From contig CAJFCJ010000029.1 of NCBI GenBank assembly GCA_904063045.1, forward strand, positions 1-64,000: a DNA stretch of 64,000 nucleotides, given 5' to 3'. The position numbers and the translations under genes are program-made. The stretch is from Dimorphilus gyrociliatus (lineage: Eukaryota; Animalia; Annelida). Below the pieces are notes generated by a model, which had not been told where the DNA came from, did no database searches, and saw nothing but the letters and a program-made list of their open reading frames with translations. Within the stretch, counting starts at the first letter, position 1, and each line of letters starts with the position of its first letter. Shown here in pieces: positions 8,913-56,049 of this stretch.

Positions 8913-9146
8913 ATTCCGTAAAAGAAATAAGAAAGAAAAGTGCTGAAGTTGAATTGATTTGTTAGTTTTATTATCATAATAAACGATCATTTTTAGATAC
9001 GTCACAATGACGCATACCAGAAGAAATAATAAACATTATTTAATAATGAGCTAAGACGATATATACATAAATCTAAAAATTATATTAAATCTACGCATTT
9101 AAATAAAATCTGCATTACTTAGTGATACATAGGATAAAAATCTCAA

Positions 9147-14960: not shown

Positions 14961-16099
14961 AAGAATCACTTTATGTTTCTATTTTTTATTTGCAATTAAT
15001 TTTTTTCTTCTATTTTTCTCTTTTCTCACTTAAAAACAAGAAAAGAAAAGGATAGAAGATACTTACTATAGTATTTAAACAATTCGTTATAGTTTCTTTC
15101 CAATAATTCCAGGTTATCTTTTTGATTTAATACTTAACTAACTATATACGGTAGATATTAAAATATACAGTATGTATTTACTATTACTGCAATCGTTTTG
15201 TTCAAAGTTTGTTTATTATTATCTAATAAAATTATAATGTAATTGTTTTTATTTAATTACAACAGTATCATTATTAGTTTTTGAAGTAAAACACTTACAT
15301 ACATATATATCCGAAAGGTGGCGCTGGGTGTCATATAAAACGTAAGACAAAAAAATCATTTTTTAACTCAAGTGGTAAATTGGAAATTGCTACAAATGTG
15401 ATGAAGAAGTTGTAAAGGGCAGGTGCAAAAATACGATTAACTTAACTTTTAGCTGTCAAAAGTTACATAAAATGTAACTTTTCCATTACTTAAGACACGT
15501 TTAATATATTAAAATAATAAAGTATTTTTTGATATCAATCATTATAATTACTTTTTAAATCTACAGTTTAAGTTTTACAATATCATATTATCGCTCCTTT
15601 GCATTCCTTTCTGTTGATTATGTTACGCCCCACCACCCATGAATTGGCGACTTCAATGTGCCAGTCGGCGTTGAGGAAAAGGCCGAAAAATTCGCACGCC
15701 TATTATATTAACCGGCCCACGAAGCTGGAGAAAACTAGTGATCGATTTAACAATCATACTGGATTCCTAAGTTTTCCAATCAGGTTTGTACATGGTTGCC
15801 TTATTGTTTTTTAACGGGTTTTATAATTTGCATTTAATTACGTTACGTAAGAGTCGATGATAAGCCCACCGGCATTTTAGATAGGAATGTAAAAGGTATT
15901 AAAGGAATTACAATCAATGTCTAGTCGGTCTATTTTAGTCTTGCAATTGTACTGAGCTTCACCTACTAAAGACGACTCTCTGTTGGCTATCATGTTTTCT
16001 AGGTCAATTTTAAAACTTATTAAAAGCAATATTCAAGAAGGTATTGCTACTTATATGTAAATATATAAATAAATTTGTACCTAGGACATTTTAATGCAA

Positions 16100-18523: not shown

Positions 18524-21500
18524 ATGTTTTCCCTAAGAATCTCGGTGATCCTGTTACTTTTAGCAGTTCCATCGATAGCTCAAGAACGTTAGTATGCTAA
18601 ATTAAATTTTAGTCTACTCTACGGAACGTCTTATATATTCATGTAATTAAATTATTAGTATGCACCGCCAAAGATGATCCGCGTCTTCGAGTTGAAGTTA
18701 CGGAAGCTAATCAAGCAACTTTTGAACAAAATAGAGATTCTGATGCTTATAAAGCAGAAATCAAAGTTCATGGAATATTAAATGACAACATAAAAATGGA
18801 TCTGAAGCAAAACTCGGGTTCAGTTTTTAATCCTCAAGAGTAAGATAATCCACATATTGATTACCATTTAAATAAATACTTGTATTTGTAAATATACTAA
18901 TTTACCAGATTTTTTACACTGGAAATGGAGGATAATCGTATTATGCTTAAATTGAAGCAAGGATTAGACCGAGAGGTTGATTTTATTCTCTTATTCTCAA
19001 GATAAATTCAATTTATATTAAATTAAGGAATTATATTGATTAAACCATTATTCCAGAGCTACCCTTTGGAGTACTATTTTACAATAGTGTGCACAAAAAT
19101 TACAACAAATGATCAAGGAGTAAGTATTTATCTATTTTAACCTGAATATATTAATTAATTAATTAAGTAGACAAATTAACATAAAAGGCTATATTATTCT
19201 TATTATTACTTGATAAATATTCTTCTTATTGAATAATTCGTAGTGATACTTTTAAAATACTATATACTTCTACGTAGTTCTAGATTTTAACATAGTTTTT
19301 TATTGTTTATTTCTACTAACACTAATGATTTTTCAACTCTCAGTCATCTGTCCGCAAGGTACCAAAATAAAATAGATTTGCTATAAAAAACAGTTTATTG
19401 CATCATATCAAAAGAAAACCAATAAGCCTATTCTTTTCCTTCTGCTTGAACTATTTCCTACTTCGTTGCTTATATTTCTATCTCTAGTTTGTAGTAATTT
19501 GCCGTTACTGTGTTATCTTTTTTGTTTTTTGTGCTTTTTATCTTTTCTTCCCTTCTAATATTTTCCTTATTCTAAATGAAAGCTTAAAATAATAATTGAA
19601 CAAGTTTCACTCAAGCGGGCTGCTTTGATCCCAATGAAAAACACGAGAGCTAACCTGAACTGATTATTTTTCCATATTTTTTCCTTTCATCCCTTTCCCT
19701 CGTTTATTTTTAATCTGAAAAGTTCATTTCATTTCTTAAATCTCAACAAAAATTCAACTTTACTAATAGTCATTTTTTTTTTCTTTTTTTTTCTCTTTAC
19801 CAATTTCTAGGTAAACTTGAATGTTTCTCTGAGAATAAGAGATGTTAATGATAATGCTCCTCGTTTTTTGGACGCCAACTATAATGTAAAAATAGAAGAA
19901 GTCAGTAATTTTCTTTAACGCAAGGAAAGGCATTAGTTGTTTATTTTTAATTTATTTATAAATCCTAGATTGTACCAGTGGACTATACTGTATTAGAAGT
20001 TGCTGCTAAGGATAAAGATTCCGGTAAAAATGGCGAAATTACGTACAATATTGAACCTGCATTAAATGTTAGGAATGACGGAAAAGATCACTTTAAGATT
20101 TTATCTTCTGGAATAATTAAAGTAGCCAAAGCATTGGATTATGAGGCTTTAGCAATTACTGGCGATCGTAGTTTCTATTTAAATGTCTCTGCATCGGATA
20201 ATTCGGATACTTCGAAATTAACAAGCTATCAAACTGTTCGTATTCAAATAGAGGACAGTGACGATCTGGGACCTGTCTTCATCGCCTCAGGATGTGTTCA
20301 AGTAGACGCAGTCTGCATTGATGTCAAGTATACAATAACTCTTGAGAGTGGAGTTCTCAGACCAAATTTAAACGTTCGTCCTAATTCTATTCGAGCAATA
20401 GATAGAGATAGGGGAATAGCGAATAAAATCACTTATAAATTTGTGGCCGGTGAACCGTCGATTTATAATAACTTTTTTGAAATTTCATCTGATGGAACAG
20501 TTACCCAAAAGAAGGCAGTTGACAGAATAACAGACTTCAAAGAAGCCACTATAACAATTCTTGCCCAAGAAATTTCAATTGAAAAACGATTTGAAACTGC
20601 TGTTTTACATATAGTTGTCAACCAGAAGAATGATTTTGCACCAGTAATTAAGAGTGTCGACGATAAAACTACTGCTTATATTAGAGAAAACTCTGATGTC
20701 GGAAGCTTTCTTATGGATGATCAGGGTAAAGCTTTCAAGATAGAGGTTAGCGATCCCGATCAAGTTGAAGGAGATAGTGCTACAAAATTTAGTTTGAATG
20801 TAATAGATACTGGAATAGTGGGTATTACTGATGAAGGATATCTAAGACTTCAACAACAAGTTGACTTTGAACAACTACCCGATGCCATAAGTTTTAGAGT
20901 TCAAGCCAGGGAGTTAAATGTTCCAAATGGAAAAACGACTCTTGAATCATTCAGCATAAAAGTTGTTGATGTTAATGATAACAAACCAAGATTTTCTACA
21001 TCAGATAATCTTGTATTCATTAAAGAAATAGAGAATCCTGAGCCAAGGGTAGTTTATACTGTTAGCGCAAGTGATGTCGATTCTGGAGACTTTGGAAATG
21101 TTACTTATTCTATAACATCTGGAGGTAATGGGAAATTCGAAATCAATAAATACACTGGTGACATATCTCTCATCCGTTCTGTCAAGAGAGAAGAAACCTA
21201 CACTTTATTCATTCAGGCACAAGATAATGCACCCGCAGATGATAGATTGTAATTGATTTTCAATTTTATTAATTCAGATAGCACTGAAATGGTTGTTTTT
21301 TTTAATTTAGATTTGATACAACGTCTGTAGAGTTTAGAATTTTATTCGCAATTAATACGATTCCAAGATTCCCTTCGGAGAAGTACAAAGTAGAAGTGAG
21401 CGAAGCTACTCCAAGAAATACCATAATCTTTACGATCCAAGCTCAAGATCCTGATCCTAACGCTAGGATTAACTATAAAACAAACTTTGAAGATATGTTT

Positions 21501-24500
21501 TCAATTAACAGTCAAACTGGAGAAATTCGACTGAGGAATAGTTTGGACTACGAAAGACTAAGGACCATCCCTGTACGAATAACAGCTACGGACGGGAATA
21601 TAAATGCAGTAAGTTTTATATAAACAAAACTCATCTCTTTCTCATTCTCTGTACATTAAATATTTTATATAACGTAATTCAATCAGCGTTAATCATCGTT
21701 TTTTTATAATTCTAATCAATTTTTTTCCCCCATTTTTTTTTTACTAGACCGCAACAACAACCCTAGTTGTTACCGTGACTGATATTAATGATAATTCACC
21801 TGAGCTAGGAGAGACTGTGAAAGAGCTGTTTGTTGATGAGGGTAAGAGTAATATTATTGTCGACGGTAGAATTTGGGGTAATGACGAAGATGAAGGAGCA
21901 AATGGACAAGTTCGCTACAGAATTGAAAATAACGAATACTTCCGTATTGATGAAAACACAGGAAATATGTATACAAAAACGGCGTTAGATTATGAAACTA
22001 AAAAAATCCATAAGGTCCCTGTCATCCTCATTGATAGAGGAACACCACCAAGATCGTCTGTAGTTTATATAACCGTTAATGTCAACGATCTTGAAGATGA
22101 AATACCAATATTTGATAAGACTAGTTATCAAGCCACTGTAAATGAAAACGATGATAATGCATATGTTGTTACTGTTTTGGTTTGTATTGATATTTTTTTA
22201 CCAAGTTTTCTCAATTATTTATAATAATTTCACTTAACTAAAGGCAAGGGACGCCGATACAAATAAATCGGTAACTTATAAATTCAGCCGTAATGAAAAC
22301 AACCTTTTCAAGATAAATCAAACAAATGGAGAAATTCGAACAGCTGTCAACCTAGATTATGAATTATCACGTCGGCATACAGTTATAGTTTCAACTGAGG
22401 AAGCTGGAAATAACAGAAATTATCTATATTCAGCAACCGTCACTATAAGTGTTTTGGTAAATAATAGGCCTAATAATAATTGATTCTTCGATTGAAGCTT
22501 CAAAGAGATCGATTATACAAATAATTTTTTTTCTTTAAAAGGATCGAAACGATAACGTACCGAAATTTGAAAAGGACTTATATCGAGTGGAGAAAGGCGT
22601 AAAAGAAAATATTGCGGTTGGCTCAGACCTTACTAGAGTTAGAGCTACAGATGATGATCCGTCAGGGGTACAACATTTTTTCCCAGCTTTTTTCCAATAT
22701 ATAGGCAATTTCCTTTAACGTGACTATTTGTTTTTGTTTTTGTTAGACATTTAATAGCAGGATACGTTATAAGCTTAAATCTTCCGTACCACCTTCCGGG
22801 AATGGATTATTTTTGGTTCATCCGGATCAGGGAGTAGTAATTGTTAGAAGACCATTGAGCGATGATAAAGATGACGTTTCGAGTTACGAGGTTTGTTTTC
22901 ATTGGCTATTTACTATATTATTAAATCAAATACTTGAAGTAAGTGATTAATTGTAATTTGTATATTAACAAATAGTTAACCGTTGAGGCGATAGATTTGG
23001 GTAATCCTCCCCTTTCAAGCACCACTAAAGTTGTTGTACCAATACTTAGGAATTTAAATGCTCCAAAGTTTACGGAAACGAGTATATCAAGAACAATTCC
23101 GTCTACCTTCCCAGTGAATTCTGAAGTTGCGCGATTAATTGTTAGCGATGCCGATACAATTGATCCATTCAACTCAATTCGACTTAGAGTTATTGGCGAT
23201 GGTAAAGCTCAAGGATATTTTAAAATATCACCTAGTGGATCCCTGAGTCTAAGTCGTAATTTAAAAGATGACTCAGACAGAAGATATACAGTAAGAATTA
23301 GAGCAACTGACGGAATGGGTAAAGAAAATGAGAGAGACGCTGTTGTTAGAATTACTGTTGAAAGAAATTTAAATGCTCCCGTATTTAATCCAAAAAAATA
23401 CGATAAAACAGTTCAAGATAACCAGCCATTGGGAGATACAATTCTCACTCTTACTGCAACGGACGCTGACAAATATGCACCTCACAAGACTATTTCTTTT
23501 CGAATTATGCCTAACAATGCTGGTACACACCAATATTTTCAAGTTGATGATTCAGGAGAAGTATACCTAAAGAGGTCGCTAGCACTTGATACCGCTTTAA
23601 GAACTCAATATAAATTTAACATAAAAGCTTTTGATGAAGGCGAGCCTGAAAGAAAGGAATCTGTTGAAGAAGCAGAAGTCACTATTCAAGTTCTTCGTAA
23701 TGAAAATTCTCCAATCTTCTTTAATTCATCATACTCGGCCTTTATAAGAGAAAATGAAATAAACGTTGGTAGATTGATAACAACAGTACTGGCTAATGAT
23801 AAAGATACAGTTAATGATTTCAAAACCATTAGTTATGATATTATTGGTGATGATAAGGCTTCGAGCTTTTTCAATATTCATAAAACTAATGGAGAAATTC
23901 GAATTGCAACTAATTTTGTCAACGATCCAGCGGAGTTGCATAGAATTCGTGTCTTAGCAAGCGACAAGGGGAATCCACCTAGAACTGCAAGCGTATTCGT
24001 TAATGTTGAAATCGATAGAAATTTAAAATCTCCACAATGGAATGGTGGTATCAATAGAAACTATAAAATTTTAGAAACTGTTCCCTCAGGAACAATAGTG
24101 GGAGACGTTCAAGCTCGAGATTCTGATAAATTCCCACCAAATAATGTTGTTTCATATTATTTAATTGGAGATGAAAAGGCAACTGAATACTTTAACGTCA
24201 ATGACAAAACGGGTAGAATTTTTGTTCAAAAAGATCTCACAGCCGATTCAAGCTCAAGTTTATCTTATAGTTTAGTATTAATTGCTAGAGATTCCGGTAA
24301 AGTGCCACGATCCAGCTCGAATTTAACAATAACAGTACAAGTCATTAGAAATTTGAATGCCCCTGTATTTACTTCCGGTGATTTTACAGTACAGCCAATT
24401 AGATCTCAAACTTCTGTTGGATCTAGAATTTACACTGCATCCGTATCGGATAGCGATGATAAAAATCAATTTGGCTCCGTAACATATAGTATTATCGGAG

Positions 24501-27500
24501 ATAGTTTAGCTAAAAATTTCTTCGAGATCAATTCAAAATCAGGAGAAGTCAGAGTAAGAAATGCACTAGATAGCGATCCATCAACAAAATATAATCTTGT
24601 AATTCTGGTTGAAGATAATGGAGATCCTCCAAAATCTGATCAAATGATTCTGACAGTACCAGTAAACAGAAATCAGAATAAACCTAGATTTTTTACAAAT
24701 AATAAGAACATTGTCATTTTGGAAACGCAAGAATTAGGAGCTATAATTGCTGAAATGCCTGCTAGTGATAATGATAAATTCCAACCATTCAATACTATCA
24801 CCTACAGACTTAAGCCTGAAGGAGTAAATGCTGAATACTTTAATGTTGATTCCTTCACTGGAAATGTCTCAGTTAGAACTAGTTTAAACTCTCATTCAAG
24901 AGATGTTTATAGGGTAAGATTTTTTTTCCTATTGTACTTAAATCTTGTCCAAGTTCTAAAAGCGTGTATGTAATATTTTAAATAGCTGACCATTGAAGCA
25001 TGGGACGGTGGAAATCCGCCACAAAAATCCGATCAAGATGGAAGAGTTACAGTCAACGTGCGACGAAATAAAAATACACCGAGGTTCACCGATTCGAATT
25101 ACGGCGTCAAAATTGATAGAAACATTGAAGTTGGCTCAAGAGTAATCAGAGTTCAGGCAACAGATTCAGACACCACACAGCCTTTTAATACTATTACATA
25201 TTCAATTACCGGTGATGATGTGGCAAGCGATTATTTCGAAATTGATAATCTAGGAGTTATAACGCTAAAAGCGTCTATAAACCTTAGAGAAGAGACAGTT
25301 TATAGAGTAAATTATACCATAATCTATATTTAAAAGCATTAACAATAATTTAATTATTAATTTTATTGTAGATAAGAGTTATTGCAAGCGATAAAGGCCT
25401 TCCATCAAAGAGTGCAATTACTATTGTTACTGTTAGTGTTAATAGGAATCTTGAAGTGCCTATATTCACAAATCCAACAACACGTATTGCTAACACAACT
25501 ATTCTCGAGACACATGATTACAAATCAGTTATTTTTACTTTCTCTGGTACTGATAGTGATGTCACCGTAAGTCTTTGCCTAACAGCATATGTATTCCTCT
25601 TTCTATTTATATTTATTTATTAAAGGCGCCATATAATACTGTAAATTTTCGAATTGTTGGAAATTCGGATGATACTCAATTCTTCTTAGTCGATTTTAAT
25701 TCTGGAAAACTGCAACTCAGAAGGTCTCTATTACAAGATTCTAATTCCAAAACAGTATACAATGTTAGTATATAGAGTATTTGTAAATTCAATTAATGAT
25801 TTATTGTACAATAATTTGTGTTGCTTTCTTTTTAGTTGGATATTGAAGCTGTTGATGGAGGAAATCCACCAAAATCATCTATCGATCGAATTAGGTATAA
25901 GGTTTTTGTTAAAAGAAATACCGGAGCTCCAACTTTCTCTCAACCTTCTTATTCTTTTTCTGTTGACGAGACAACTGGATCTGGCAATAAAATTGGAATA
26001 GTTTCTGCTACCGATTCAGACTCCGATTTTAATAAAGTAACATATGAAATTTTCCGAGGGGATGTAGCTTCTAACTTCTTTTCTATTAATCCCAATACTG
26101 GTGAAATATCTATAAGAAGATCTTTACAAGACGATTCCGCTTTAACCTATGAAGTAATGATTAAATAATTTGAATGAATTTTTTATTATAGTATTATTTT
26201 ATACTTCTGCAATAGATAAGAGTTATAGCATCCGATGATGGTGTTCCACCACTGTCTGAGACAAAGCTAGTAAAAATATCAGTAAATAGGAATCTCAATT
26301 GTCCTACTTGGAATGATAAAAATATCAATACGAACATTATGGAAACTGATCCTGTTACAAAATTAATTGCCAGAGTAAGAGCAAGTGATAGAGACTCGAA
26401 GGTATGCGAAACTGTTGCCACTGTGTAACAAAGGAACAATAAAACTAATTATTTCTTTTATTTCAGAGTCCACACAAAGATATTAGATATAAAGTAATTG
26501 GTAATTCTGAAGCTAGTAAATATTTTACCGTTAATGCTATTTCTGGTCAAGTCTATCAAAAAGTTCCCGTATTGAATGATCCAAACAAAGCCGAAGTATA
26601 TAAAGTAAGGATAACTTTTACACACAGATATACTGTATATATTTAATACAATAGAATCAATAACCTTTAATCTTTTCACTCAGATTGAACTATCTGCTTC
26701 GGATTTAGGAGAACCTATTCCTTGCACTGCTGCTAGTAATAGCAGCGTTACAGTTAGGGTCTATAGAAATTTAAATGCACCCGTTTTCACTAATAATGGA
26801 ACATATAGCAAAAAGATTAGAGAAAATTCAAATATAAATGATTTTGTCACGTCAGCAAGAGCGACAGATAAAGATTCCAGATCGCCTTTTAGAGATATTG
26901 AATATAAAATTGTTGGTGAAGGTCCATCTATTGGACTATTTAAAATTGGACTAACAGATGGAAATATACGAATTCGTAATTTCCTAACAACCGATCCATC
27001 TCAAACTTATCGAGTATTTATAACTATCAATATTTTAAATTATCGAATAATTAATGCTATTTAATCACTACAGATTATTGTAGTAGCCGAAGATAAAGGT
27101 ACTCCAAGGAGATCGGCCACAGGAACAGTTGATGTAGCAGTTGAAAGAAATTTAAATCAGCCATCATTTACTGAGACCAACGTTCGTTATGAGATCGTTG
27201 AAACAACGATTGTTGGAACTGAACTAGTTCAACTAAGAGCAACTGATGATGATACTTTTGTAAGTAAATGTAAAATTATTATTCGAATTGTTATAAATTA
27301 TGTTTTATCGTCTTAAAAAAAGGCTCCCCACAACGAAATAAGATACAGTATTTCGCCAAACCAATTCCAAGCAGAAGAGTATTTCAGCGTTGATCCAATT
27401 TCTGGGAAAATCTTTTTAAGGAAATCTGTTCAACAGCTGAACAATTTAGAAGTAACGGTTCGTATTTTATAAAATCAATGTTTAATCATTGTTATACCAC

Positions 27501-45500: not shown

Positions 45501-48500
45501 GCGCAAATCCGAGGAGAAGAGCACAAACAACGGCAACTGTTCAAGTCAGACGAAATGTCTTCCCACCCCGTTTTGATCAGAATCAGTATAATGTAGCAGC
45601 AAACGAAAGCCTGCCTCTTGGACAAGTAATACTTAAAGTTGAAGCCGATGATAGAGATAAGGTAAGAAGAAAAACGAAAAATAATAAATTTAATAAATTA
45701 AAATATTTCAATAGGATCAATTGGAATATTCAATAATTGGTAATGAGAAAGCTTTGGAATATTTCCATATTAACCCAAGAACAGGAGAGATTTCACTAAA
45801 TAAACCCCTAAATAAAGATAATGATGAGAATTATCTTGTAAGTCTTTTAAAATTTAAAAAGTAGAGCTTTCTGTCTAATGATAAATGAATATTTTTAGAT
45901 ACAAGTAGAAGTTAAAGATGGTGGAAAACCCGAGCAAAAAGCAATTACGAATGTAAGAGTAAAAGTTAAAAGAAATAAGAATATGCCAACATTCGATGCG
46001 GAGATTAATGCAAATGTTCCAGTTAATACTAAAGTTGGTGCGGTAATATCATCTGTATCTGTATCGGATCCAGATTTATCTGGCAACCTCATTTACGAAA
46101 TTTCGGGTGATGATACAGCAAAATTGTTTTTCTCTATTAATAGTAATGGTGAAATTATACTCAAAAAACCATTAACCGATGATAATTTAAGAAATTTACA
46201 ATATAAGGTAACACTTTGATAATTTTAACTGATTAATGAATGATAATACATGTTAAATCATTGAAATTTAATTAGCTTAAAGTATCAGTCTACGATTCAC
46301 ATTTCCCGAGAGATGTTATCTCTACAACTGGAACTATTGATGTCAATCGTAATGCCAATCCGCCACAGTTCGATTCTAGCAATTATAATTTTGAAATAGC
46401 TGAAGATACTGATATCGGAGCATCTGTATTTAAAGTATCAGCAAACGATCCTGACGGAGTAAGTTTTTATATTACTATATCTACAGTATCAAATTACTCT
46501 TTTCGTTTCATTTTGAAAATAGGGAAATGTTACTTTTATGATAAATGATGAGACTGTTTATCAAAAGTACTTTTACATTGATCCACATTCTGGTGTTATT
46601 AAATTGAGGAATTCGATCCTAAAAACCCCTGAGAAAAATATGGTTATTGTTGTTGAAGCAACTGATTCTGGAAAGCCGATTCAAGTGGTTAAAGCTAGAA
46701 TTAATATTTTTATCAAAAGGGATGAATATCCTCCAGAATTTGTTAATCTTCCAAATACAACAAAAATTACTGAAAATCAAGAGATTAATGGAGTATTTTT
46801 TATAGCCAAAGCCAGTGATCCTGATTCTATTACTCAAGAAATGAACTATGAAATTGTCGGCTATCCACCAGCCGATCAATATTTCCAAATAAATAAGGAA
46901 AATGGTGAAATTAGTGTTCAGAAGAGCTTGAAAGAAGATCGCGGATTAGATTATATACTAAGAATTGGATCTTACGCAACTGTAAAACCTGCACAGAAAG
47001 TTTTCCAAGATTTGACAATTACTGTACAAAGAAATGTTTACAAACCGCAGTTTACGCAAACTCAATACGAGAAATCGGTAAAATCAACTCAAGCGCTTGG
47101 TGATGTAATTCTTACTGTAAATGCTACTGATCGGGATCAGGATGTTTTAACGTATACCCTAGAAACTGAATCTTGTAAAGAATACTTCTTTATAGACTTC
47201 AGAGATGGAAACTTGAGATTAAGTAAACTATTACCTGCTGATAATTCCATAAAGGAATTCGATTGCATAATCAAAGCCAATGATGGCGGCTATCCTACGC
47301 CTCAAACAACTACTGTTCCTGTAAAAATCACTGTTCAACCGTCCAACTTAGTTCCCGTAATTGATCCAGTTCAGAGCATTGAAATTGAAGAATCAGTACC
47401 AGAAAATACTATAATCCAAAGTGTTAAAGCAACGTTGCCTTCAGTTAGCGTGAGTTGAAAAAATATAATATCTAAACTATTTATATACTCTTATCATTAA
47501 TGGGTTTTTGTATAAAACATCTTCATTTTATCTTATAGGGAGAATTGAAATATGAAATAGTAGGCGATTATCCATCACCGGACTTCTTTGGTATAAACTC
47601 ACAAGGAGAAATAACAATAACAAGAGATTTAAGAAAGGATAGTCTACAATTGAACGCCTATAGAGTAATTATTAAAATAATTCGTAGAATCTTTATGTGA
47701 TTTCAACCCATTTTTATGTTATTAGATAAAAATTGAAGTTTACGATAGTGCTACTCCAAATGCAAGAGCAAAAACAGAATTCTCAGCAACTGTTAAACGT
47801 AATGTTAATAAACCATCCTTCGAGAAGGATACCTATCAAATATCAATTAATGATACATGGAAGCAAGGAGATCTTGTTGCTGAAATAAAAGCAACAGATA
47901 AAGATAACGAGACTATTACATATTCCATTGTTGGTGATGATAAATCGATCATATACTTTCATATCGATCAAAATACTGGAAAGTTATCGGTTCGAAGACC
48001 ACTATCTGAAGACAATACCCAAGTGTATGAAATAACTATTCAAGCCAAAGATAAAAGAGGTCATTTGAGCTTTGCTAAAGTTACTGTTCAAGTTCCACGA
48101 GATCTCTACCTCCCAGTATTTGAGGCTGACAATGATCCAACTGTAATTGTCGAAGGAGTAAAACCAGGACTAGTTGTTAAAACTGTAAGAGCGAATGATC
48201 AAGACCTAAAACAAAAGATAAAATACGGAATGGATGGCTATTTCCCATCAGACATTTTCTTTGAAGTAGATGAAAATACTGGAGAAATAAGGGTAAAGAA
48301 AAGTCTAAAAGATGATAATTTAGGAAACCAAAAATATATCGTAAGTTAAATTTGCTACTTAGAATGAGAGATATCTAATCTTTATCATTTTCAGCTGCAT
48401 ATGTACGCCTATGACACTCAATTTGAGGATAGAAGAGGATATGCTAATTTTACAATTACTATTAGAAGAAATCCTAACGCACCTCAATTCAAGGAAGATG

Positions 48501-51500
48501 TTTATGAAAAAACTATGCCATTAACCACTCCTATTGGAGAAGAGATCGTTCAAATAGAAGCCACTGATGGAGATAATGTACAAATCTATTATCCCTTTAA
48601 CATTCTCCTTATAGTATTCTGTATTATTTATTTTTCACTCCAGGATAGGATTATCTACTCAATTGAAACAGAACAAGGATCAACAATTGATAGTCTTTTC
48701 TTCATTAACCCCGATACTGGTCGAATAATATTAAGAAAATTATTAGTTGGAGTAGCAGAAAAATCATTTGAAGTTTGCCTTTAATTTATAGATATACTCT
48801 CTTAAATGACCAAACATAAAAACATATTTATTACTTTCCCACAGTTTTTAGTGAAGGCTGAAGATAGCAGAGGAAGTTCATCATCAGTTGTCGTTAGATT
48901 AACAATCGGAGATAAAAATGAACCACCAGCGTTTGATAAAGAAATTAACAAATTTACTTTATCGGAGAATAGTCCAGTTAATGAAAATGTTATACAGATT
49001 GCAGCCACCGATCCTGGTTCTTATACTAATTTACTTAGCTTGTAGCTATTTTTAAATAATCTATTAATCTCTATTATAGATTTGTTCGGACCAATGGTCT
49101 ACGAACTTAAAGGAGTTAGACCAGGTTCAGATTATTTCGGCATTAGGACAATAAACAATATTGGTCATATTTACTTATTGCAAACTATCGAAAATGATTG
49201 GACCCAAATATATACGGTATGTTTAAATAAGTTGAATTATTTATAGCATAACAGTAACTTTAATAATAATTTGATAGTTACGTATTGTGGCCTATGATCA
49301 ACAATACAATTACCTAAAAGCTGAGACGTTGGTTGAAATAACAGTTGAAAGAAATCTTAATAAACCTGTGTTCAAATCTTCCAATATCCGAGTATCTGTT
49401 AATGAACACGATCCTCTTGGAAAAAATATTACTCAAGTTTCCGCCACTGATGCTGATGTTCCAGTAGGATTATTTTGTAAATTATATAATCACATATCTT
49501 AATCTTTAACTGTATTTCTCAAGGGTCCAAAATCCCAGATTTCCTACGATATTATTGGTGACCATCCAGCAGACAGCTTATTTGCTATACATCCAAAAAT
49601 TGGTTACATTTTCATAAAAGAACCATTAACCGAAAAGCCAGAAAAATTATACATTATTAGTGTTGTTGCAAGAGATAATGGCATACCTCCTCAATCATCA
49701 GTAGCAACTATCAGAGTAACAGTTGAAAGAAACGATCTTAGCCCTGTTTTCCCTATTAGTTCAGACTATTCTAGAACAATTGGTTTCCGATGGGCAATAG
49801 GATCAAGAATAGTTCGTCTTGAAGCAACAGACGGAGACGAAGAGGTTTGACAATTAATAACAAATTGGAACCCAACTTACTTTTTCATTAAACTTTTAGG
49901 GACCAAATAGTATTGTGTCTTATAAAATAGCAGAAGCAAATAACGAAACAATTGAATATTTCATGGTTGAAGAAGAAACCGGATGGATAAGTCTGAGAAA
50001 AGACTTATCAACAAGCGCAACAAACGAATTCAAAGTAAACTTATACTGCAATATTAAAAATATTCGTTCTAAATTAGCCATCTTCTTTTACAAACTAGAT
50101 GAGCGTCATCGCATATGATCACGGTAAACCATCGAAAGAAAGTCAAAAGAAAGAACTAACTATAACAGTATCGAGAAATTCCACAACACCTATTTTCAAA
50201 CCTACTGACTACGAGGCTGAAGTTGGTGAGAGTCAAGCTGTTAACTCAGAGATAAAGATCAACCCACCACTCCATGTTATTGATAGCGATAACGTAATTA
50301 TTAATTAAAAATAAGGGGGAAAATAGACCAGAATGATTAATTTTGTTTCTTTTTCATCGTATAGTGCGGTCTCCTATATTCAATAATTGGACTTGACAAA
50401 GCTCAAAATTTATTTAAAATCAATCCAGGTACAGGAAAGATAACTATTGGTAAAGATTTGAGATTGGATCACGAACCATCTTATACTGTAATTTTTTCCC
50501 TTTCTTTTGTTTGTACACGAAAAGATATACACGTAATTTATTATTTTTATGTAGATAAAAGTAGCTGTTCAGGACGAATGCGACAAACAAAATACGGCAA
50601 TTGCTCAGATTAAAGTAAACGTGAATAGAAATGAAAATTCACCAATATTTAGCAACGAACCATACGTAAAGAGTGTGGGAGAAGATATATCTATCGGTGA
50701 AGAGATAATAACTATAACAGCAACAGATGAAGATGAAGGAAAGGCAGGAGAAATTAGATATTCTATTGTTGAAGATGACTCCTCAGCAAATATTACTGAT
50801 CTATTCTTCCTTAATCCTCAAACTGGAGTTGTCACAATCATCAAGAGTTTACTCGATGATCCTAACAAGAGACAAGTCTATAGAATAACGGTTCAGGCTG
50901 CTGATCAGAGTTTAGTTCAGAAATCAACAACTGCAATAGTTAGAATCAACGTCAGAAGAAACTTATATGCACCAGTTTTTGACAAACCTTCATACAATGC
51001 TGAAATAAGTGAAAATGCCAAAGTTAACGACATTGTTTTGAATGTTAAAGCCACTGATTCTGATGACGCAACTGTAAGTAATGAGTATATTATAATGATA
51101 ATATTAAATCAAAACCGGAATATTTTTATAGGGTGAAAATTTAACATACGAGCTAATTGGAGGAAATGACGCTGGTATAGGATTATTCCAAATAGGTAGA
51201 AGATCGGGTGTTCTCTCTGTTAAAAATCCTTTATCGACAAGTTCCCAAGAGTATTTCAATGTATGATGATTTATTTATTATTGATATACTTTCGCATATT
51301 AACTAGAAAATTTAATTTTTTATCAGTTTATGGTTGAGGTGAAGGACGGAGGCTCTCCTGAAAGATCGGCCAGAGCTCCTATTTCTATAAGAGTTAAAAG
51401 AAATGAATTTCAACCAATTTTTGAAAGTCCAACCTACACAAAAGTTGTTAATGAATTTATAAGAGTTGGAGCTAATGTTCTCACTGTAAAAGCTGTAGAC

Positions 51501-54500
51501 AAGGACGATAGTTCAACAAGATCTGGAACTATTGAATATTTCTTGGAAGACATAGAAAATTCAGGAGAGAACGTAATTCAATATTTCTCTATTTGGAGAT
51601 CGGAAGGAAGAATAGTTATTGCCAAAAATCTTCATGAGGATGTATCTAAGCAGAGAACATACATGTTCAATGTTATCGCTAGAGATCAAGGAATACCATC
51701 TAAGAGCAATCGCACAAAAGTCGAGATAACTGTAAGACGCAATGACAACAAACCGATTTTCGAAAAGAGTCCATACAAGTGGTCTGCTAATGAATTAGAT
51801 CCTATCGGTACAGTCGTAGGGAAAGTTAGAGCCGTAGACGCCGACATTGAATTTCAACCTGACGTAAGTGTTTATATAACTAACACTTTCTGGGTGATAA
51901 CAATTTTATCTATCGAAAGTGAAAGTAATCACTAGGTGTCGTTACTGACACCTATTTAAATGCTGGTATGTTAGAACGTCACTAACAGTAACATTTCTCC
52001 ATCAGGCACCGAACTCGAAAGTTACCTATAGATTATCGGCATTTTCTGGAGGATTGGAATACTTTGCTCTAAATTCAAAAAATGGTGAAATCTCCGTTGC
52101 TAAATCTCTATTCGCAGATCCCGATGCCGTATTACAATATATGGTAAAACATATGCGCTAATCTATTTAACACAATTTATAATATTAGCCAATAATCCAT
52201 TAGCTTAAAGTCTTTGCTGAAGATGGCGGAAACCCAATGCAAACTGATCAGGTGGATGTTCTCATCAACGTTACCAGACCAACAACATCAGTTGTTGGTA
52301 AATTGGGATTTGCTAAATCGTTATATCTGTAAGTAGCGTAAGCGTTTAAATCTTTCCACTAGTTCTAATATCTAATTATCCAAACAGAAAAGAAGTAATG
52401 GAAGATATGACACAAAACAGAGAAGTTGAAAGATTACAGGTTGTTAATCTTAAAACAAATCAAACTGCTGAATGCCTTATTCAATCCGGAAATGACGAAA
52501 GTATAACAAAAGATATTCCAATGATACATCAATTTAAATGATAAAAACATATATACTAATGCATTCTTTCTTCCCACATTCTTCTTTTCTAGATAAATTT
52601 TCAATAGAGATAAACAAGAATCAAACCTATTGTACCATTAAACTAGATGGAGAGCTGGATAGAGAAAAGAAACAGAAATATATCCTATCAGTCATCATTA
52701 AAAATAAAAATAAAAATACCGGTACCAATCGAAAAAAGCGAGATGGTGTGTCATAACTTTTCCTTTCTATAACATTTTAGATATAATATACACCTATACG
52801 TATAATCATTGTTTAACCCACACAAGTAACTAGTCACGTTGTTCGTCATTCTATTCAGGAACTTGTCTCCCCTTTTTTATCTGATTAGATAAACTTAAAT
52901 GTTTATTTAATGCATATCTATATATGTTGTTTAAATGTATGTATATAGTAGTTATATTTATTAGTATTACCGAATAGTATTCTTAATTGCTATATAACAA
53001 AAACATCCTTTTTTATTGTTATATAGCAATATGCACATAGATCACCATATAGCGTTACTGTAGATTTAACATATGTCTTTTTGGCACATAAAAATTGTTA
53101 CTTAATTGACGAATTGAATATTGATTATATACTTTTAATTTGCAGTTGTAGCCACTGGTTTTAATAGGATAAGAGTAATAATTGAAGTGCTTGATGTCAA
53201 CGATTCACCACCTGAATTTATAACACCGGATTACAGTCCTTTGAACTTGAACAACGTCTACGTTACAGCTGTTCCTAGGGAAATATCAGCACCTAGTAAT
53301 ATAATACAGATAAAGACTATCGACAGAGATTTGGGCGTTAATAAAGAAGTGACTTACTCAATATTAAGTAACGACGTACCTTTTAAAATCGACACAAACG
53401 ATGGACAAATATCGAATCTAAAGGAATTTACGAAAGAGGATAGTTTCTTTGAATTTTCAGTTAGTGCGTCTAATTCAAAATCGGATGTTAAGTTATTATC
53501 AACTGCTAAGACTTATGTAAGTTTAATAGATTGATTAAATTAAATTAATTGACTAATTAATTTCTATTTGTCTTTAATTTAGATAAATCTAATTGAAGAA
53601 AAGCATAGAATAGTCCTTGTATGGGAAAATCAAGCTGTTGAAGATGTTAGTCAGAGATTGAATGATACTAAAATGTAAGTTTCTTATTGAATATGTATAA
53701 ATAGTGAAACATTAAATTGTTCAATCTTCTAGAGCTCTTCAGAGATTATCCAATAAGATAATCGTAATTGAAAAACTAACACCAAGAACTTATTTTGCTG
53801 GCGGTGATGAGAAAGTTGAAAAAACTGAGTAAGATCTCCCATTGATTATTCAATTAAAAAGAGTAATTATTTATTCTTATTTACAGTACGGATATGTACT
53901 TTGTCGCCATATCGCCCACAACTTTTAAAATCTTGGAAACCGAAAGTGATGAAGTAAGCCAGTAAGTAACAAATGCTAAGATTTTGTAGAGTTTGTTTTT
54001 AAATATCCTTTGTCATCTATTACACCAAGCGTTATATGAAACGAAAACAGAGCAAAACCAAAACCAACAAGTGTCATACCGAGAGCTACTATAATAGATA
54101 ATAATAAATATATAGTTATTCTTCTTTTCTTCTCTTCTGCTCGTTGCATAGCCTCCAGAACCCTCGTTCTTCTTACTCTTTCAACTTTTATTGGAGTTGC
54201 TAGGGCGTCCCATACAAAATCATCTTCTTTAGATACTAACTCAGTTTGAGATTTTAGAGAAAAGGTCGCTCTCCACCTTCGCATTATTCATTTAGTAATA
54301 ATTATGAATTACGAATTATATAATAATTTGAATTTTTAAAACAGATCTTTCACATCATCGGTGGCGATTACTAATATAAAGAAAGAGATGGAAACTCTTG
54401 GACTAAATATTCAAAGTGTGAGAACTGCCTATCCAGTTGTCGGTGCAATTACGGGAAAAACGTACGAAAGCTATGACGAAGCTCCTTGGATTGCCCTAAT

Positions 54501-55388
54501 AGTTCTTGCAGCCCTTATTATAGTCTTTTCAATAATTGGAATGTTTGTAATATGTTTCACCTACGGAAGATATAAACACTCTCTTAGAGATAAAAATGCT
54601 GCCTATATTCGAACTTTACCTGCTGGACATGTAAATGGCTCTACAACCGAACTTATGTACGACAATTCGTCGGATTTTCTTAGGGAGTACGAAACTCAGA
54701 GCTTAGCCGTTTACGTTCCGGCCGACGAGCCAGTACAAGAACAAGGAGAAATTAACATGAACTTTTCTGTGGCGGACGAAGCAACAGCTCGCACACTACC
54801 TCGAAGTACCTACAGTGCCGATGCATCAACAAGATCCCACAATGGTGGTGTATTCTCGGCTACTAATCCAATATATCAAAGGTATAGAGATTCATAAAAT
54901 AACATTATAGAAGTTCATAAACAAACATTTATATTTTCTCTAACAGTTCTCAACAATTTACCTCTATTCATGAACGACTCAGCAGTGGAAACGACGCTAC
55001 AACATCAAGAGCGGTCGGATATGGAGGTGATTTTACAACATCAAGAACGGTCAGAGGTGGAAGCGACTTTGCAGCATCAAGAACGGCCGGAGCTGGAAGC
55101 GACTTTTCAACATCAAGAGCGGTCAAAGGTGGAAGCGACTTTGCAACATCAAGAACAATAGGAGGTGGAAGCGATTTTGCAACGTCCAGAAAAATTGAAG
55201 GTGGAAGCGATGTAGTATCATCAGGAGTGATCGGAGGCGAAAGTACTAGCGATACAAGACACGAATCAAGATTAGTAACAAAAACATCAATGAAATCATA
55301 CGGTCATAGAGAGAATACAAACCGATTCTCATCAGGCAGTCAGACTGCTGCCGCTTACGAAGTTAACGACGATCCAACCGTCTTTTAA
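18524..55388 (+). CDS. Giant cadherin-related type I membrane protein (~85 EC repeats; PCDH15/Cad99C/CDHR-like termini)
   Basis: Signal peptide MFSLRISVILLLLAVPSIAQE at 18524. Continuous in-frame GT-AG exon chain through EC repeats, a MAD12/SEA-like juxtamembrane region (about 53582-54480), a TM helix ALIVLAALIIVFSIIGMFVICF (about 54490-54560) and a cytoplasmic tail ending ...DDPTVF* (TAA 55386-55388). All cadherin ORFs in the track from 19978 to 54897 are exons of this one gene. Confidence 0.93.
19344..19358 (+). other. Candidate 15-nt microexon (SSVRK) in cadherin EC1
   Basis: ACTAAC branch-like site, pyrimidine tract, CAG|TCATCTGTCCGCAAG|GTACC; phase 0-0 inside an unusually long ~690-nt intron region. 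Confidence 0.65.
27660..27668 (+). other. Candidate 9-nt microexon (DIE) in about EC21
   Basis: TTTTTTAATTGCTCGCAG|GATATCGAG|GTTTGA; phase 0-0 within a ~600-nt intron, with TGC just upstream of the acceptor. Confidence 0.55.
40557..40571 (+). other. Candidate 15-nt microexon (DNTTL) after the DxD motif of about EC54
   Basis: TTTTAG|GATAATACGACATTG|GTACGT; phase 0-0, flanked by enlarged introns (40401-40556 and 40572-40907). Confidence 0.6.
53976..54284 (-). CDS. Nested antisense 102-aa single-pass membrane protein inside a cadherin intron
   Basis: ATG-to-TAG ORF fills most of intron 53962-54344. It has a charged N-terminus, a KKRR stretch and a ~30-residue hydrophobic segment (ITIYLLLSIIVALGMTLVGFGFALFSFHITLGVI). 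Confidence 0.55.
   Translation of the reverse strand: MRRWRATFSLKSQTELVSKEDDFVWDALATPIKVERVRRTRVLEAMQRAEEKKRRITIYLLLSIIVALGMTLVGFGFALFSFHITLGVIDDKGYLKTNSTKS
54981..55232 (+). repeat. Seven 36-nt coding tandem repeats (12-aa xGGSDFATSRTI consensus) in the cadherin cytoplasmic tail
   Basis: In the spliced frame: SSGNDATTSRAV GYGGDFTTSRTV RGGSDFAASRTA GAGSDFSTSRAV KGGSDFATSRTI GGGSDFATSRKI EGGSDVVSSGVI. Confidence 0.9.
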
Positions 55389-56049
55389 AGAAAGAAACTC
55401 ATATTACCTTGCCATTTTACTTATCATTAGTTAGAAAGAGAAAAAGATAAAAGAAACAAAAAAAAACAAATGTTCTATACCTTTGATATATATATATATA
55501 TTTGTATGTTTCACGACAGAGATTTTTTATACGGAAAGAAAGATCTGTGATATAATATAATATGCTCTTTTACTCTTATTTAAATATATGAATATTCTAA
55601 TAATATTTATTTACTTATTCATATATTTTTTCAAGCACATGGAATTAAAAAACAATCTATTATATAAAGTATATAGATATGAGTTGAAATTTATATGATT
55701 ATTTGGAATGAAATGCAATTTTTTATGTCTTTTAATAAATTTATTAAATAAACTATGAAATACACTTTTTTTCCTTATCTTAACGAGAGGATATGGTGGC
55801 TTTCGTTGAGAGGAGGGAACACCTCTCTCTAGTTCTTTTGCGATAGAATAGTTTGAGTTTACCTCTTAAGCAGATAAATTTTAGGTTCAAAGGTAGAAAG
55901 CGATAAATTAGAACTTTCAATTAGCTTAATGACTTTCAAACAGAGCTTTAGCCAATCAGCGCTCATTGTTTTCTTGGTATTTAATTATGGAGCGTTCTTT
56001 CAATGGATGATCAGTTGTCGTTTTCGAACCGAGTAGTGTATTGGCAAGG

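What the first reader, a model, noticed from the sequence alone, without database searches (positions are those of the whole stretch)
18524..55388. A single ~85-repeat giant cadherin built on a PCDH15/Cad99C-like chassis
Seen: the many cadherin ORF fragments splice into one reading frame from a signal peptide to a TM helix and tail. I count about 85 EC repeats (about 9,000-9,500 aa). The ends look like the tip-link/microvillar cadherins: EC2-3 has DDLGPVFIASGC (PCDH15 DDLGPMFLPC; CDHR5 has a similar Cys-containing segment), and the juxtamembrane KIIVIEKLTPR...TDMYFVAISPTT plus TM resembles the PCDH15 MAD12 region. Known: PCDH15/Cad99C have 11 ECs, CDH23 and Dachsous 27, Fat 34. Inference: a PCDH15/CDHR-type link protein with about 75 extra repeats could span roughly 0.35-0.4 um at ~4.5 nm per EC. 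It could act as a very long inter-microvillar, ciliary or cuticle/glycocalyx tether. I know of no functional description of such a molecule.
Basis: partly seen in the sequence, partly recalled or inferred. Interest (0 to 1): 0.92.

Follow-up and report, generated by a model that had tools for sequence, protein, structure and literature searches.

The report
85-repeat giant PCDH15-like cadherin gene
This is one expressed gene for a roughly 9,500-residue membrane cadherin with 85 repeats, the longest member found here of an unstudied family in molluscs, brachiopods and ribbon worms; its two ends resemble the hair-cell/microvillus link protein PCDH15/Cad99C, and its 74 middle repeats have lost most of their calcium-binding residues.

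Summary
It has 92 exons, about 28.6 kb of coding sequence and about 9,500 aa: signal peptide, 85 gapless cadherin repeats, one transmembrane helix and a 250-aa tail. One spliced 26,955-nt transcript contig covers the 5' leader to EC84. A second covers EC84's end to the tail. The junction between them is inferred from reading frame, domain continuity and orthologues.

The PCDH15/Cad99C affinity holds. EC2-5 align collinearly with PCDH15, including the DDLGPxF linker and Cys pair. A model of the family's juxtamembrane domain finds PCDH15 MAD12, CDH23 MAD28 and Cad99C first. There is no EGF/LamG region, so it is not Fat-type.

- EC10-83 carry an xRNxN linker. Arg is present in 95%, calcium site-3 ligands are kept, and site-1/2 ligands are mostly lost. 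The repeats alternate with a period of two.
- A furin-type RKKR site in EC84 is conserved in most relatives examined.
- 3,300-5,900-aa relatives exist in molluscs, Lingula and a nemertean, auto-named "Fat4-like".

Function is inferred only, and 0.38 µm is an upper bound. The scan also noted another ~80-EC cadherin elsewhere in this genome (s1-080738, unchecked).

The parts
15752..15783 (+). 3' end of a non-coding 5' leader exon, spliced to 18486/18488 across a ~2.7-kb first intron
   Evidence: The loose 5' letters of the X1 and X2 contigs at 18486 match 15752-15781 exactly. A GT/AG junction fits with the cut 2 nt further right.
18524..55388 (+). Coding span of the giant cadherin gene: 92 exons, ~28.6 kb CDS, ~9,500 aa
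   Evidence: Gene finder, RNA joints, corrected model.
18524..18583 (+). Signal peptide (aa 1-19/20)
   Evidence: Hydrophobic N-terminus; one of only two strongly hydrophobic stretches.
18584..23059 (+). N-terminal module EC1-EC9. Linkers are mostly classical (DVNDN, DINDN, DRNDN). EC1 has a Cys pair (aa 23 and 116). The EC2-3 linker DSDDLGPVF plus two Cys lies at 20254-20316.
   Evidence: Collinear PCDH15 match of EC2-5. Invariant D.DD..P.F/C/C columns in alignment A2.
23060..52305 (+). EC10-EC83: 74 repeats with xRNxN(x)P linkers and a two-repeat periodicity
   Evidence: Column statistics, ligand table, lag analysis, linker list.
52306..53234 (+). EC84, split by the 400-nt intron 52746-53145. 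Its loop carries the furin-type site RKKR at 52730-52741. It ends in a classical DVNDSPPEF linker.
   Evidence: Pfam partial hits on exons 86 and 87. The equivalent RRKR/RKKR is present in P0008, P0010, P0030 and P0036.
53235..53606 (+). EC85, the last cadherin repeat
   Evidence: PF00028 E 9e-9 on exon 87; own profile.
53583..54486 (+). Membrane-adjacent domain (aa ~9127-9265), encoded by four short exons and the start of exon 91
   Evidence: Fits the family profile A1 at E 2e-22. The family model has a MAD/ferredoxin-like fold.
54487..54564 (+). Transmembrane helix (aa 9266-9291)
   Evidence: Hydrophobicity scan on the first gene model; position of the helix sequence in the final model.
54565..55388 (+). 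Cytoplasmic tail (~250 aa). It contains a conserved FLREYETQSL..P.DE...GEINMNF block (54676-54765), NPIY (54865-54876), a 36-nt x ~6 tandem repeat (54985-55210) encoding a 12-aa unit built on GGSDFATSR, and a C-terminal -TVF.
   Evidence: The same block, NPxY/F and T-x-hydrophobic ends are seen in P0008, P0010, P0036 and P0047.
55389..55480 (+). 3' UTR, at least ~90 nt
   Evidence: X2 contig reaches 55480; sequence.

Best explanation
The region is one expressed gene for a type I membrane protein of about 9,500 aa: signal peptide, 85 cadherin repeats, a membrane-adjacent (MAD) domain, one TM helix and a ~250-aa tail. It is the longest member found here of an unnamed lophotrochozoan family of long cadherins. 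That family combines a PCDH15/Cad99C-type N-terminal module (EC1-9) and a Cad99C/PCDH15-type EC-MAD-TM ending with a variable-length insert of specialised repeats.

Shown:
- gene structure, splicing and expression;
- the repeat tiling;
- in EC10-83 the DxNDN linker is replaced by xRNxN, with Arg in 95%; the ligands of calcium site 3 are kept (93-96%) and most ligands of sites 1-2 are lost;
- a period-2 super-repeat;
- a furin-type site in EC84, conserved in most relatives examined;
- a conserved tail block, an NPxY motif and a PDZ-ligand-like C-terminus.

Inferred:
- The protein is displayed on an apical surface (microvilli, cilia or epidermis).
- Its N-terminal tip makes the adhesive contact, and the MAD favours parallel dimerisation as in PCDH15.
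- Each middle linker binds about one Ca2+, and the invariant Arg pairs with the remaining acidic residues in place of the other two ions. This would make a long filament that is more flexible or extensible than a classical cadherin rod. Its resting length would therefore be below the 0.38 um maximum.
- Furin cleavage in EC84 leaves the ~9,000-aa ectodomain either held non-covalently or shed.
- The tail anchors to PDZ/PTB scaffolds.
For: One gene: gene finder; a spliced 26,955-nt contig plus 3' contigs; a single BLAST alignment of aa 8910-9395 to nemertean P0036 spans the unbridged junction; a related species' contig is collinear with aa 2-4110 at 55-75% identity. 85 ECs. PCDH15-type N-terminus: and the Mya 'cadherin-99C-like' fragment. 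MAD. No EGF/LamG: gapless EC tiling up to the MAD. Linker chemistry. Period 2: identity ~0.31 at even lags versus ~0.27 at odd lags. Family and its length range (3,267-5,858 aa). Furin site and tail motifs. MAD-driven dimerisation and partial-Ca linkers acting as elastic elements are documented for PCDH15 (10.1101/460097; PMC5120219, title and abstract only, listed). A Platynereis gene annotated Pcdh15 marks epidermis and ciliary bands (PMC5913682).
Against: No contig spliced across 52745|53146 was listed. Contig depth rises from 116 to 633 to 918 toward the 3' end, which could mean 3' bias or an extra internal start. The MAD fold was modelled on orthologue-like P0047, not on the window's own sequence. 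The MAD has no sequence-level match to PCDH15. EC1 and EC85 are not PCDH15-specific. Foldseek on the window's own EC2-5 model does not separate PCDH15 from other cadherins. No phylogeny with PCDH15/Cad99C sequences could be built, so orthologue versus paralogue is open. Mya has a Cad99C-like fragment only ~31% identical to the bivalve family members, which hints at a separate true orthologue. The roles of the Arg, of furin and of the tail motifs, and the protein's localisation, are untested.
Confidence: 0.72

Rival explanations
1. There are two transcription units: a secreted ~9,000-aa cadherin array ending near 52.7 kb, and a separate short membrane protein (end of EC84, EC85, MAD, TM, tail) starting near 53146. 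A weaker version is that the full-length mRNA coexists with an abundant short 3' transcript.
For: The transcript assembly breaks at 52690-52729. Depth is 116 upstream and 633-918 downstream. Two contigs start at 53145 with loose A-rich letters that do not clearly match exon 86.
Against: Exon 87 begins in mid-domain: it carries the last strands of EC84 and the DVNDSPPEF linker, with no ATG or signal peptide. The frame is open across a GT..AG junction. Lingula, Patella and Tubulanus relatives encode the same segment as one polypeptide, and one alignment spans the junction. The break lies in low-complexity sequence that the tool skipped. A rising depth toward the 3' end is what poly(A)-primed libraries would be expected to give on a 29-kb mRNA (my expectation, not tested).
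Confidence: 0.06
2. It is a Fat/Dachsous-type planar-polarity cadherin, as the automatic names of its relatives ('protocadherin Fat 4-like') suggest.
For: Whole-sequence HMMER scores of the family's N-terminal region are highest for Fat4 and CDH23. The relatives carry Fat-like names.
Against: Those scores are sums over many generic EC matches. There are no EGF or laminin-G domains and no room for them. The only collinear multi-EC match is to PCDH15. The MAD abuts the TM as in PCDH15/Cad99C/CDHR2, and no Fat or CELSR appears among the top fold hits. The DDLxPxF+Cys hallmark is absent from all Fat4, CDH23 and DCHS proteins fetched.
Confidence: 0.03
3. The molecule is the same, but it does a different job. 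After furin cleavage the ~9,000-aa ectodomain is released or loosely held. It then acts as a structural component of the glycocalyx, cuticle or mucus layer rather than as a tensioned cell-surface link. The PCDH15-like ends would be inherited chassis without tip-link-like function.
For: The RKKR/RRKR site is conserved in the penultimate EC across phyla. Repeat number varies widely within the family, from ~25 to 85, as is common in matrix and mucin-like proteins (general knowledge, not tested here). EC1 is divergent.
Against: The MAD, TM, tail block, NPxY and PDZ-type end are all conserved, which argues for a signalling or anchoring membrane stub that stays coupled to the ectodomain. There are only 58 N-glycosylation sequons and no mucin-like region. 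Repeats are conserved one-to-one with the related species.
Confidence: 0.17

Closest known systems
Protocadherin-15 (vertebrates) / Cadherin-99C (Drosophila)
   Same: EC2-5 are collinear with PCDH15 and include the non-canonical DxDDLxPxF EC2-3 linker and the following Cys pair. A Cys pair sits near the start and end of EC1. The ectodomain ends EC-MAD-TM, and Cad99C and PCDH15 are the best fold matches to the MAD. The C-terminus looks like a PDZ ligand.
   Different: It has 85 ECs instead of 11. Seventy-four inserted repeats carry xRNxN linkers. It has a furin site in the penultimate EC. The tail block (YETQSL..P.DE, GEINMNF, NPxY) found only family members in a word-indexed search restricted to proteins of 1,863-5,927 aa; PCDH15 and Cad99C were not compared directly. 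EC1's first ~95 residues and the MAD have no detectable sequence similarity to PCDH15.
Unnamed lophotrochozoan long cadherins annotated 'protocadherin Fat 4-like' or 'hypothetical' (e.g. Potamilus CHS0354_039207 3,387 aa; Patella XP_050391949.2; Lingula XP_013411494.1; Tubulanus XP_074647699.1; Saccostrea 5,858 aa; Sepia transcript 5,252 aa)
   Same: They share the architecture where models are complete: a PCDH15-like N-terminus (Potamilus, Sinanodonta), RN-type repeats, a dibasic/furin site, the last EC, MAD, TM, tail block and a T-x-hydrophobic end.
   Different: They have about 25-55 ECs against 85 here. None has been characterised.
Cadherin-23
   Same: It is long (27 ECs). Its MAD28 lies next to the membrane and is among the top fold hits. 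It has a PDZ-binding end.
   Different: No collinear match to CDH23 EC1-3 was found. The N-terminus is PCDH15-like instead. CDH23 linkers are mostly canonical (general knowledge).
CDHR2 (PCDH24), the intermicrovillar link cadherin
   Same: The ectodomain ends EC-MAD-TM, and CDHR2's MAD is a fold hit (rank 9). It has a microvillar link role by analogy.
   Different: CDHR2 has 9 ECs. There is no specific sequence similarity beyond generic ECs.
Fat / Dachsous giant cadherins
   Same: They have many ECs, some Ca-free linkers, and reported proteolytic processing of Fat (general knowledge).
   Different: This protein has no EGF/LamG, a different N-terminus, its MAD directly at the TM, and 2.5 times more ECs.
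Other database giants, e.g. Nematostella LOC116612238 (up to 7,723 aa)
   Same: They are very long uncharacterised cadherins.
   Different: They have canonical DxNDN linkers and extra non-cadherin N-terminal domains. They are shorter than this protein.

Membership tests
Cadherin superfamily | Tandem extracellular cadherin (PF00028) repeats in a membrane-anchored protein | tested here: met
   PF00028 is found on 9 of the 10 large exons. 84 profile domains plus EC1 tile the ectodomain. There is one signal peptide and one TM.
PCDH15 / Cad99C | Eleven EC repeats | tested here: not met
   85 ECs.
PCDH15 / Cad99C | Collinear similarity of the N-terminal ECs, with the non-canonical EC2-3 linker DxDDLxPxF and the Cys pair that follows | tested here: met
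   One 414-residue stretch aligns to PCDH15 residues 153-571 at 100.7 bits. The columns are invariant in A2. The motif is absent from the Fat4, CDH23 and DCHS proteins fetched.
PCDH15 / Cad99C | EC1 of the tip-link type (N-terminal strand pinned by an intradomain disulfide; CDH23-binding face) | tested here: inconclusive
   Cys residues lie at aa 23 and 116, at what I recall as the positions of the PCDH15 EC1 disulfide; that correspondence comes from memory and was not aligned here. The first ~95 residues of the family's EC1 match nothing in the PDB; the register with PCDH15 starts at the end of EC1.
PCDH15 / Cad99C | Ferredoxin-like membrane-adjacent domain (MAD12) between the last EC and the TM | tested here: met
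   AF2 model of P0047:3118-3260 has pLDDT 76. Top PDB folds are 6eet, 8tri, 6bxz and 6c14. Top Swiss-Prot models are Cad99C (23% identity) and PCDH15. The window's own aa 9127-9249 fit the profile at E 2e-22. Caveats: the model is of a relative, not this protein, and there is no sequence-level match.
PCDH15 / Cad99C | Orthology: groups with PCDH15/Cad99C in a tree of EC1-5 or the MAD | not testable with these tools
   No PCDH15 or Cad99C sequences could be fetched for a tree. PMC10734073 reports no PCDH15 in Crassostrea gigas, while a C. gigas family member exists.
Fat / Fat-like cadherins | EGF and laminin-G domains between the EC array and the TM | tested here: not met
   Only a ~125-aa MAD lies between EC85 and the TM. 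There are no Pfam hits other than Cadherin on the C-terminal exons or on relatives' C-termini.
Dachsous | 27 ECs joined directly to the TM, and a Ds-type N-terminus that binds Fat | tested here: not met
   DCHS1 EC1-4 structures match only single ECs. A MAD is present. There are 85 ECs.
Cadherin-23 | 27 ECs with a CDH23-type EC1-2 and MAD28 | tested here: not met
   A MAD-type fold is shared, but the N-terminal ECs align collinearly with PCDH15, not CDH23.
Lophotrochozoan RN-linker long cadherins (unnamed) | PCDH15-like EC1-5, an array of xRNxN-linker ECs with period 2, a dibasic site in the penultimate EC, MAD-TM, and the tail block YE[TS]QSL..P.DE / GE[IV]N / NPxY | tested here: met
   N-terminus 30% identical to P0047 at E 1e-113. 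C-terminus E 1e-44 to 1e-48 to P0047, P0036 and P0008. Motifs are shared. RN linkers: 33 in P0001, 20 in P0008 and 67 here.

The most novel reading that the evidence does not exclude
This family is the 'missing' lophotrochozoan orthologue of PCDH15/Cad99C, which has been reported as lost in the oyster. It was lengthened by repeated insertion of a two-EC cassette in which an invariant arginine replaces two of the three linker calcium ions. The result would be a new class of cadherin linker and, at 85 ECs, the longest cadherin filament known: an extensible sub-micron tether on microvilli or cilia whose stiffness depends little on calcium.
Probability: 0.25. Interest if true: 0.8.

Novelty: new variant of a known kind. 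Interest (0 to 1): 0.62.

Why it matters
Cadherin mechanics rest on three calcium ions per linker. Here 74 consecutive linkers keep only the site-3 ligands and carry a near-invariant arginine. This is a natural experiment in how to build a long cadherin chain with different calcium dependence and elasticity, and it is directly testable with a two-EC fragment.

The gene also shows that the PCDH15/Cad99C ends (adhesive tip and MAD-TM) can carry anything from 11 to 85 repeats. That bears on how link length is tuned to the spacing of microvilli, cilia or cuticle.

It may also explain why PCDH15 is reported as absent from a mollusc: the candidates are annotated as 'Fat4-like'. For annotation, it gives one RNA-supported model for a gene that automatic pipelines tend to fragment or misname.

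Tried and rejected
- Regex scans for classical motifs (DxNDN, DxDxGxN, LDRE) found them only at the two ends. That first suggested the middle might not be cadherin. Pfam and the self-built profile showed it is, with altered linkers.
- The first gene-finder pass over-extended the gene to 15172-59960. Splice matrices and an intron-length cost fixed this. Three real middle exons were then recovered with a profile bonus.
- Whole-sequence HMMER rankings for the N-terminal region are dominated by Fat4 and CDH23 through summed generic EC scores, so they are uninformative for orthology. The ESM Atlas look-alikes all scored 0.94 and do not discriminate.
- The best short named hit, P0277, proved to be a clustered-protocadherin-like fish protein, not PCDH15.
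- Sequence and profile searches of the juxtamembrane domain against the PDB found no MAD. Pfam found nothing on the short C-terminal exons or on relatives' C-termini.
- Foldseek with the window's own EC2-5 model ranks CELSR, protocadherins, E-cadherin and PCDH15 together. PCDH15 EC3-5 has only the highest identity (26-28%).
- EC85 shows no special likeness to PCDH15 EC11.
- A contig in X2 joins 23371 to 36945 (EC10 to EC46). The junction has only an 18-nt microhomology and no GT..AG, so I treat it as a template-switch or assembly chimera, not an isoform.
- The window's own MAD could not be folded, because it is split over four exons and has no single reference.

Full report
**What is in the sequence.** The window is AT-rich (about 32% GC). 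Between 19.9 and 53.5 kb it holds many + strand open frames. Nine of the ten largest carry Pfam Cadherin domains, up to six per exon. Introns are short GT-AG introns of about 55-70 nt.

I wrote a small Viterbi gene finder that uses codon log-odds trained on the cadherin hits, iteratively trained splice matrices and a cost on intron length. Adding a bonus for matches to a profile built from the gene's own repeats recovered three skipped exons.

**Transcript evidence.** Two public runs hold the sequence. Run X2 (organism coded A, 2017) contains a single spliced contig of 26,955 nt.
- It starts with 75 letters that map to a leader exon ending at ~15781-15783.
- It joins to 18486 and then follows the predicted exons through at least 52690, with GT..AG joints throughout.
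- A second contig of 1,253 nt runs from 53145 across four joints into the last exon. A third reaches 55480.
- Spliced contigs 95-99% identical occur in a coral metatranscriptome (X1).
- The joints corrected four exons of my model (18909-18975, 19057-19119, 51327-51863, 52204-52328/52388-52500). All other testable joints agreed.
- Between 24201 and 50098 my model has 20,804 exonic nt against 20,651 in the contig. The 9,543-aa model is therefore about 51 aa too long somewhere in the middle.

**The one weak point.** No listed contig is spliced across 52745|53146. The assembly breaks in an A-rich stretch at 52690-52729, an unspliced low-depth contig bridges the intron, and depth rises from 116 to 633 to 918 toward the 3' end.

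I still read it as one gene, for four reasons:
- Exon 87 starts inside EC84. It supplies that domain's last strands and the DVNDSPPEF linker, and it has no start codon or signal peptide.
- The frame is open across a GT..AG pair.
- Relatives from Lingula, Patella and Tubulanus encode the same segment contiguously.
- One BLAST alignment of aa 8910-9395 to the nemertean protein spans the junction.

**Protein anatomy.**
- The self-built profile tiles aa 118-9138 with 84 domains, back to back. EC1 is assigned from context only, and EC84 has only weak profile and Pfam support.
- A ~125-aa domain, the TM and a 250-aa tail follow. There is no room for EGF or laminin-G domains, and no Pfam hit to any.
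- 79 of 91 introns are phase 0.

**The middle repeats are unusual.**
- EC1-9 and EC84-85 mostly have classical linkers (DVNDN, DINDN, DRNDN, DVNDS).
- EC10-83 read xRNxN(x)P instead.
- Across these 74 repeats the residue at the X position of DxNDN is Arg in 95%.
- The ligands of calcium site 3 are kept in 93-96%: the central Asn, the DxD pair and the Asp of the A-x-D-x-G-x-P motif of the following repeat.
- The site-1/2 ligands are mostly gone: first Asp 15%, second Asp 19%, Asp of DRE 4%. The XEX Glu (79%) and an Asp/Glu at the DRE Glu position (62%) partly remain.
- Mean identity between repeats is 0.31 at even lags and 0.27 at odd lags throughout the array. This confirms a two-EC super-repeat, as another first-stage note had proposed.
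- Repeats are only ~28% identical to one another. They are one-to-one conserved (55-75%) with a related species' 32.9-kb genomic contig covering aa 2-4110. The array is therefore old, under selection, and not an assembly artefact.

**N-terminal affinity.**
- Exon 6 (EC2-5) aligns to PCDH15 (PDB 11iy_C, residues 153-571) as a single collinear stretch of 414 residues, 100.7 bits.
- That stretch places DDLGPVFIASGC on DDLGPMFLPC and DNAPADD on DNAPPAE. CELSR, protocadherins, CDH23 and DCHS1 match only one EC at a time.
- The D.DD..P.F...C...C columns are invariant in an alignment with the related species, three bivalve proteins and a Mya 'cadherin-99C-like' fragment. That fragment's own best PDB match is again collinear PCDH15.
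- The motif is absent from all Fat4, CDH23 and DCHS proteins fetched.
- EC1 has Cys residues near its start and end, but its first ~95 residues match nothing.
- Foldseek with an AF2 model of the window's own EC2-5 does not discriminate among cadherins.

**C-terminal affinity.**
- Sequence and profile searches of the juxtamembrane domain find nothing in the PDB or Pfam.
- Its eight best PDB matches are PCDH15 EC9-MAD12, CDH23 EC25-MAD28, PCDH15 EC10-MAD12 and the PCDH15-LHFPL5 complex (E 1e-5 to 3e-4). Nup54 follows, which is the known structural cousin of MAD12.
- Against Swiss-Prot models the order is Cad99C (23% identity, TM 0.64), human PCDH15, Cad87A, Nup54, other PCDH15s and CDHR2. No Fat or CELSR appears.
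- The window's own aa 9127-9249 fit the family profile at E 2e-22.
- MADs are also predicted in CDH23, CDHR2, Fat and CELSR (10.1101/460097). What the evidence supports is the EC-MAD-TM arrangement, with Cad99C/PCDH15 as nearest fold. It is not proof of orthology.

**The family.**
- An exhaustive HMMER search with six middle repeats returned giant proteins.
- Those rich in RN linkers come from Haliotis, Patella, Bulinus, Candidula, Lingula and Tubulanus.
- Potamilus P0047 (3,387 aa) is full length. It aligns with this protein's first 1,000 residues (30% identity, E 1e-113) and with its last 640 (E 1e-44).
- A search restricted to MAD, TM and tail found only molluscan relatives of 3,267-5,858 aa, including Crassostrea, Saccostrea, Solemya, Batillaria, Gigantopelta and a Sepia transcript. 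That search was word-indexed and limited to proteins of 1,863-5,927 aa.
- Shared features are a dibasic or furin site in the loop of the penultimate EC (RKKR here; RRKR or RKKR in Patella, Lingula and Tubulanus; weaker TKRQ in Potamilus), the tail block F[LV]R[ED]YE[TS]QSL..P.DE and GE[IV]N, an NPxY/F motif, and T-x-hydrophobic C-termini (TVF, TML, TEL).
- All are uncharacterised and auto-named Fat4-like or hypothetical.
- A recent survey reported PCDH15 as absent from Crassostrea gigas (PMC10734073). This family offers a candidate for the missing gene, but I could not build the tree needed to test that.
- In Platynereis, a gene annotated Pcdh15 marks epidermis and ciliary bands (PMC5913682). 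This is a lead for localisation, not evidence about this gene.

**Mechanism.** Shown: the architecture, the motif pattern, conservation and expression. Inferred by analogy with PCDH15/Cad99C and general cadherin structural knowledge:
- The protein is an apical, parallel-dimerising filament. Its N-terminal tip binds a partner, and its tail docks to PDZ/PTB scaffolds.
- The middle linkers hold about one Ca2+ each, with the Arg salt-bridged to the remaining acidic residues.
- Partial-calcium linkers are described as an elastic element of PCDH15 (PMC5120219; title and abstract only, listed). Seventy-four such linkers with a two-EC period suggest a flexible, possibly zig-zag, extensible chain. The 85 x 4.5 nm = 0.38 um figure is therefore a maximum, not a resting length.
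- Furin cleavage in EC84 may yield a non-covalent heterodimer or a shed ectodomain.

**Verdict.** The gene is an extreme member of an existing but unstudied family, not a one-off. I rate it a new variant of a known kind. Its interest lies mainly in the linker chemistry, the record repeat number and the possible link to the 'lost' protostome PCDH15. The scan also lists another ~80-EC cadherin without EGF/LamG on a different piece of this genome (s1-080738). I could not examine it.

Noticed in passing
window 54985-55210: A 36-nt tandem repeat of about six copies encodes a 12-aa unit built on GGSDFATSR in the cytoplasmic tail. The X1 (coral metatranscriptome) contig 'goes back 36' at 55175/55140, so that strain has one more unit.
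   Followed up: partly
window 23371 joined to 36945: One X2 contig continues from the EC10/EC11 boundary into the start of EC46. That would delete 35 ECs in frame. The junction has only an 18-nt microhomology and no GT..AG, so it is probably a template-switch or assembly chimera.
   Followed up: yes
window 52730-53174 and 53145: A low-depth unspliced contig covers intron 52746-53145 (retained intron or pre-mRNA). Contig depth steps up from 116 to 633 to 918 toward the 3' end. Two contigs start at 53145 with A-rich loose letters. An additional short 3' transcript is not excluded.
   Followed up: partly
window 53976-54284 (- strand): This is the 102-aa antisense ORF inside the 383-nt intron that another first-stage note flagged. 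It has zero RNA depth at 53980-54178 in both runs and no Pfam match.
   Followed up: partly
window 61115-62317 (+): A 400-aa open frame is full of ankyrin repeats (PF12796, E 3e-59). It belongs to a neighbouring gene downstream of the cadherin.
   Followed up: no
window 2606-3103 (+) and 13984-14960 (+): A DUF4515-like ORF lies at 2606-3103 (E 2e-10). Upstream of the cadherin leader exon there is a predicted two-exon gene of 735 nt with no Pfam match.
   Followed up: no
L001 / L002 (Logan SRR23372229, SRR23372228): Genomic contigs from a related species (GC 31%) carry the orthologous gene with the same exon layout and 55-75% protein identity. The 32.9-kb contig ends while still inside the repeat array.
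   Followed up: partly
run X1: A coral metatranscriptome contains spliced transcripts 95-99% identical to this gene. The source animal or a close relative therefore lives in or on coral samples.
   Followed up: no
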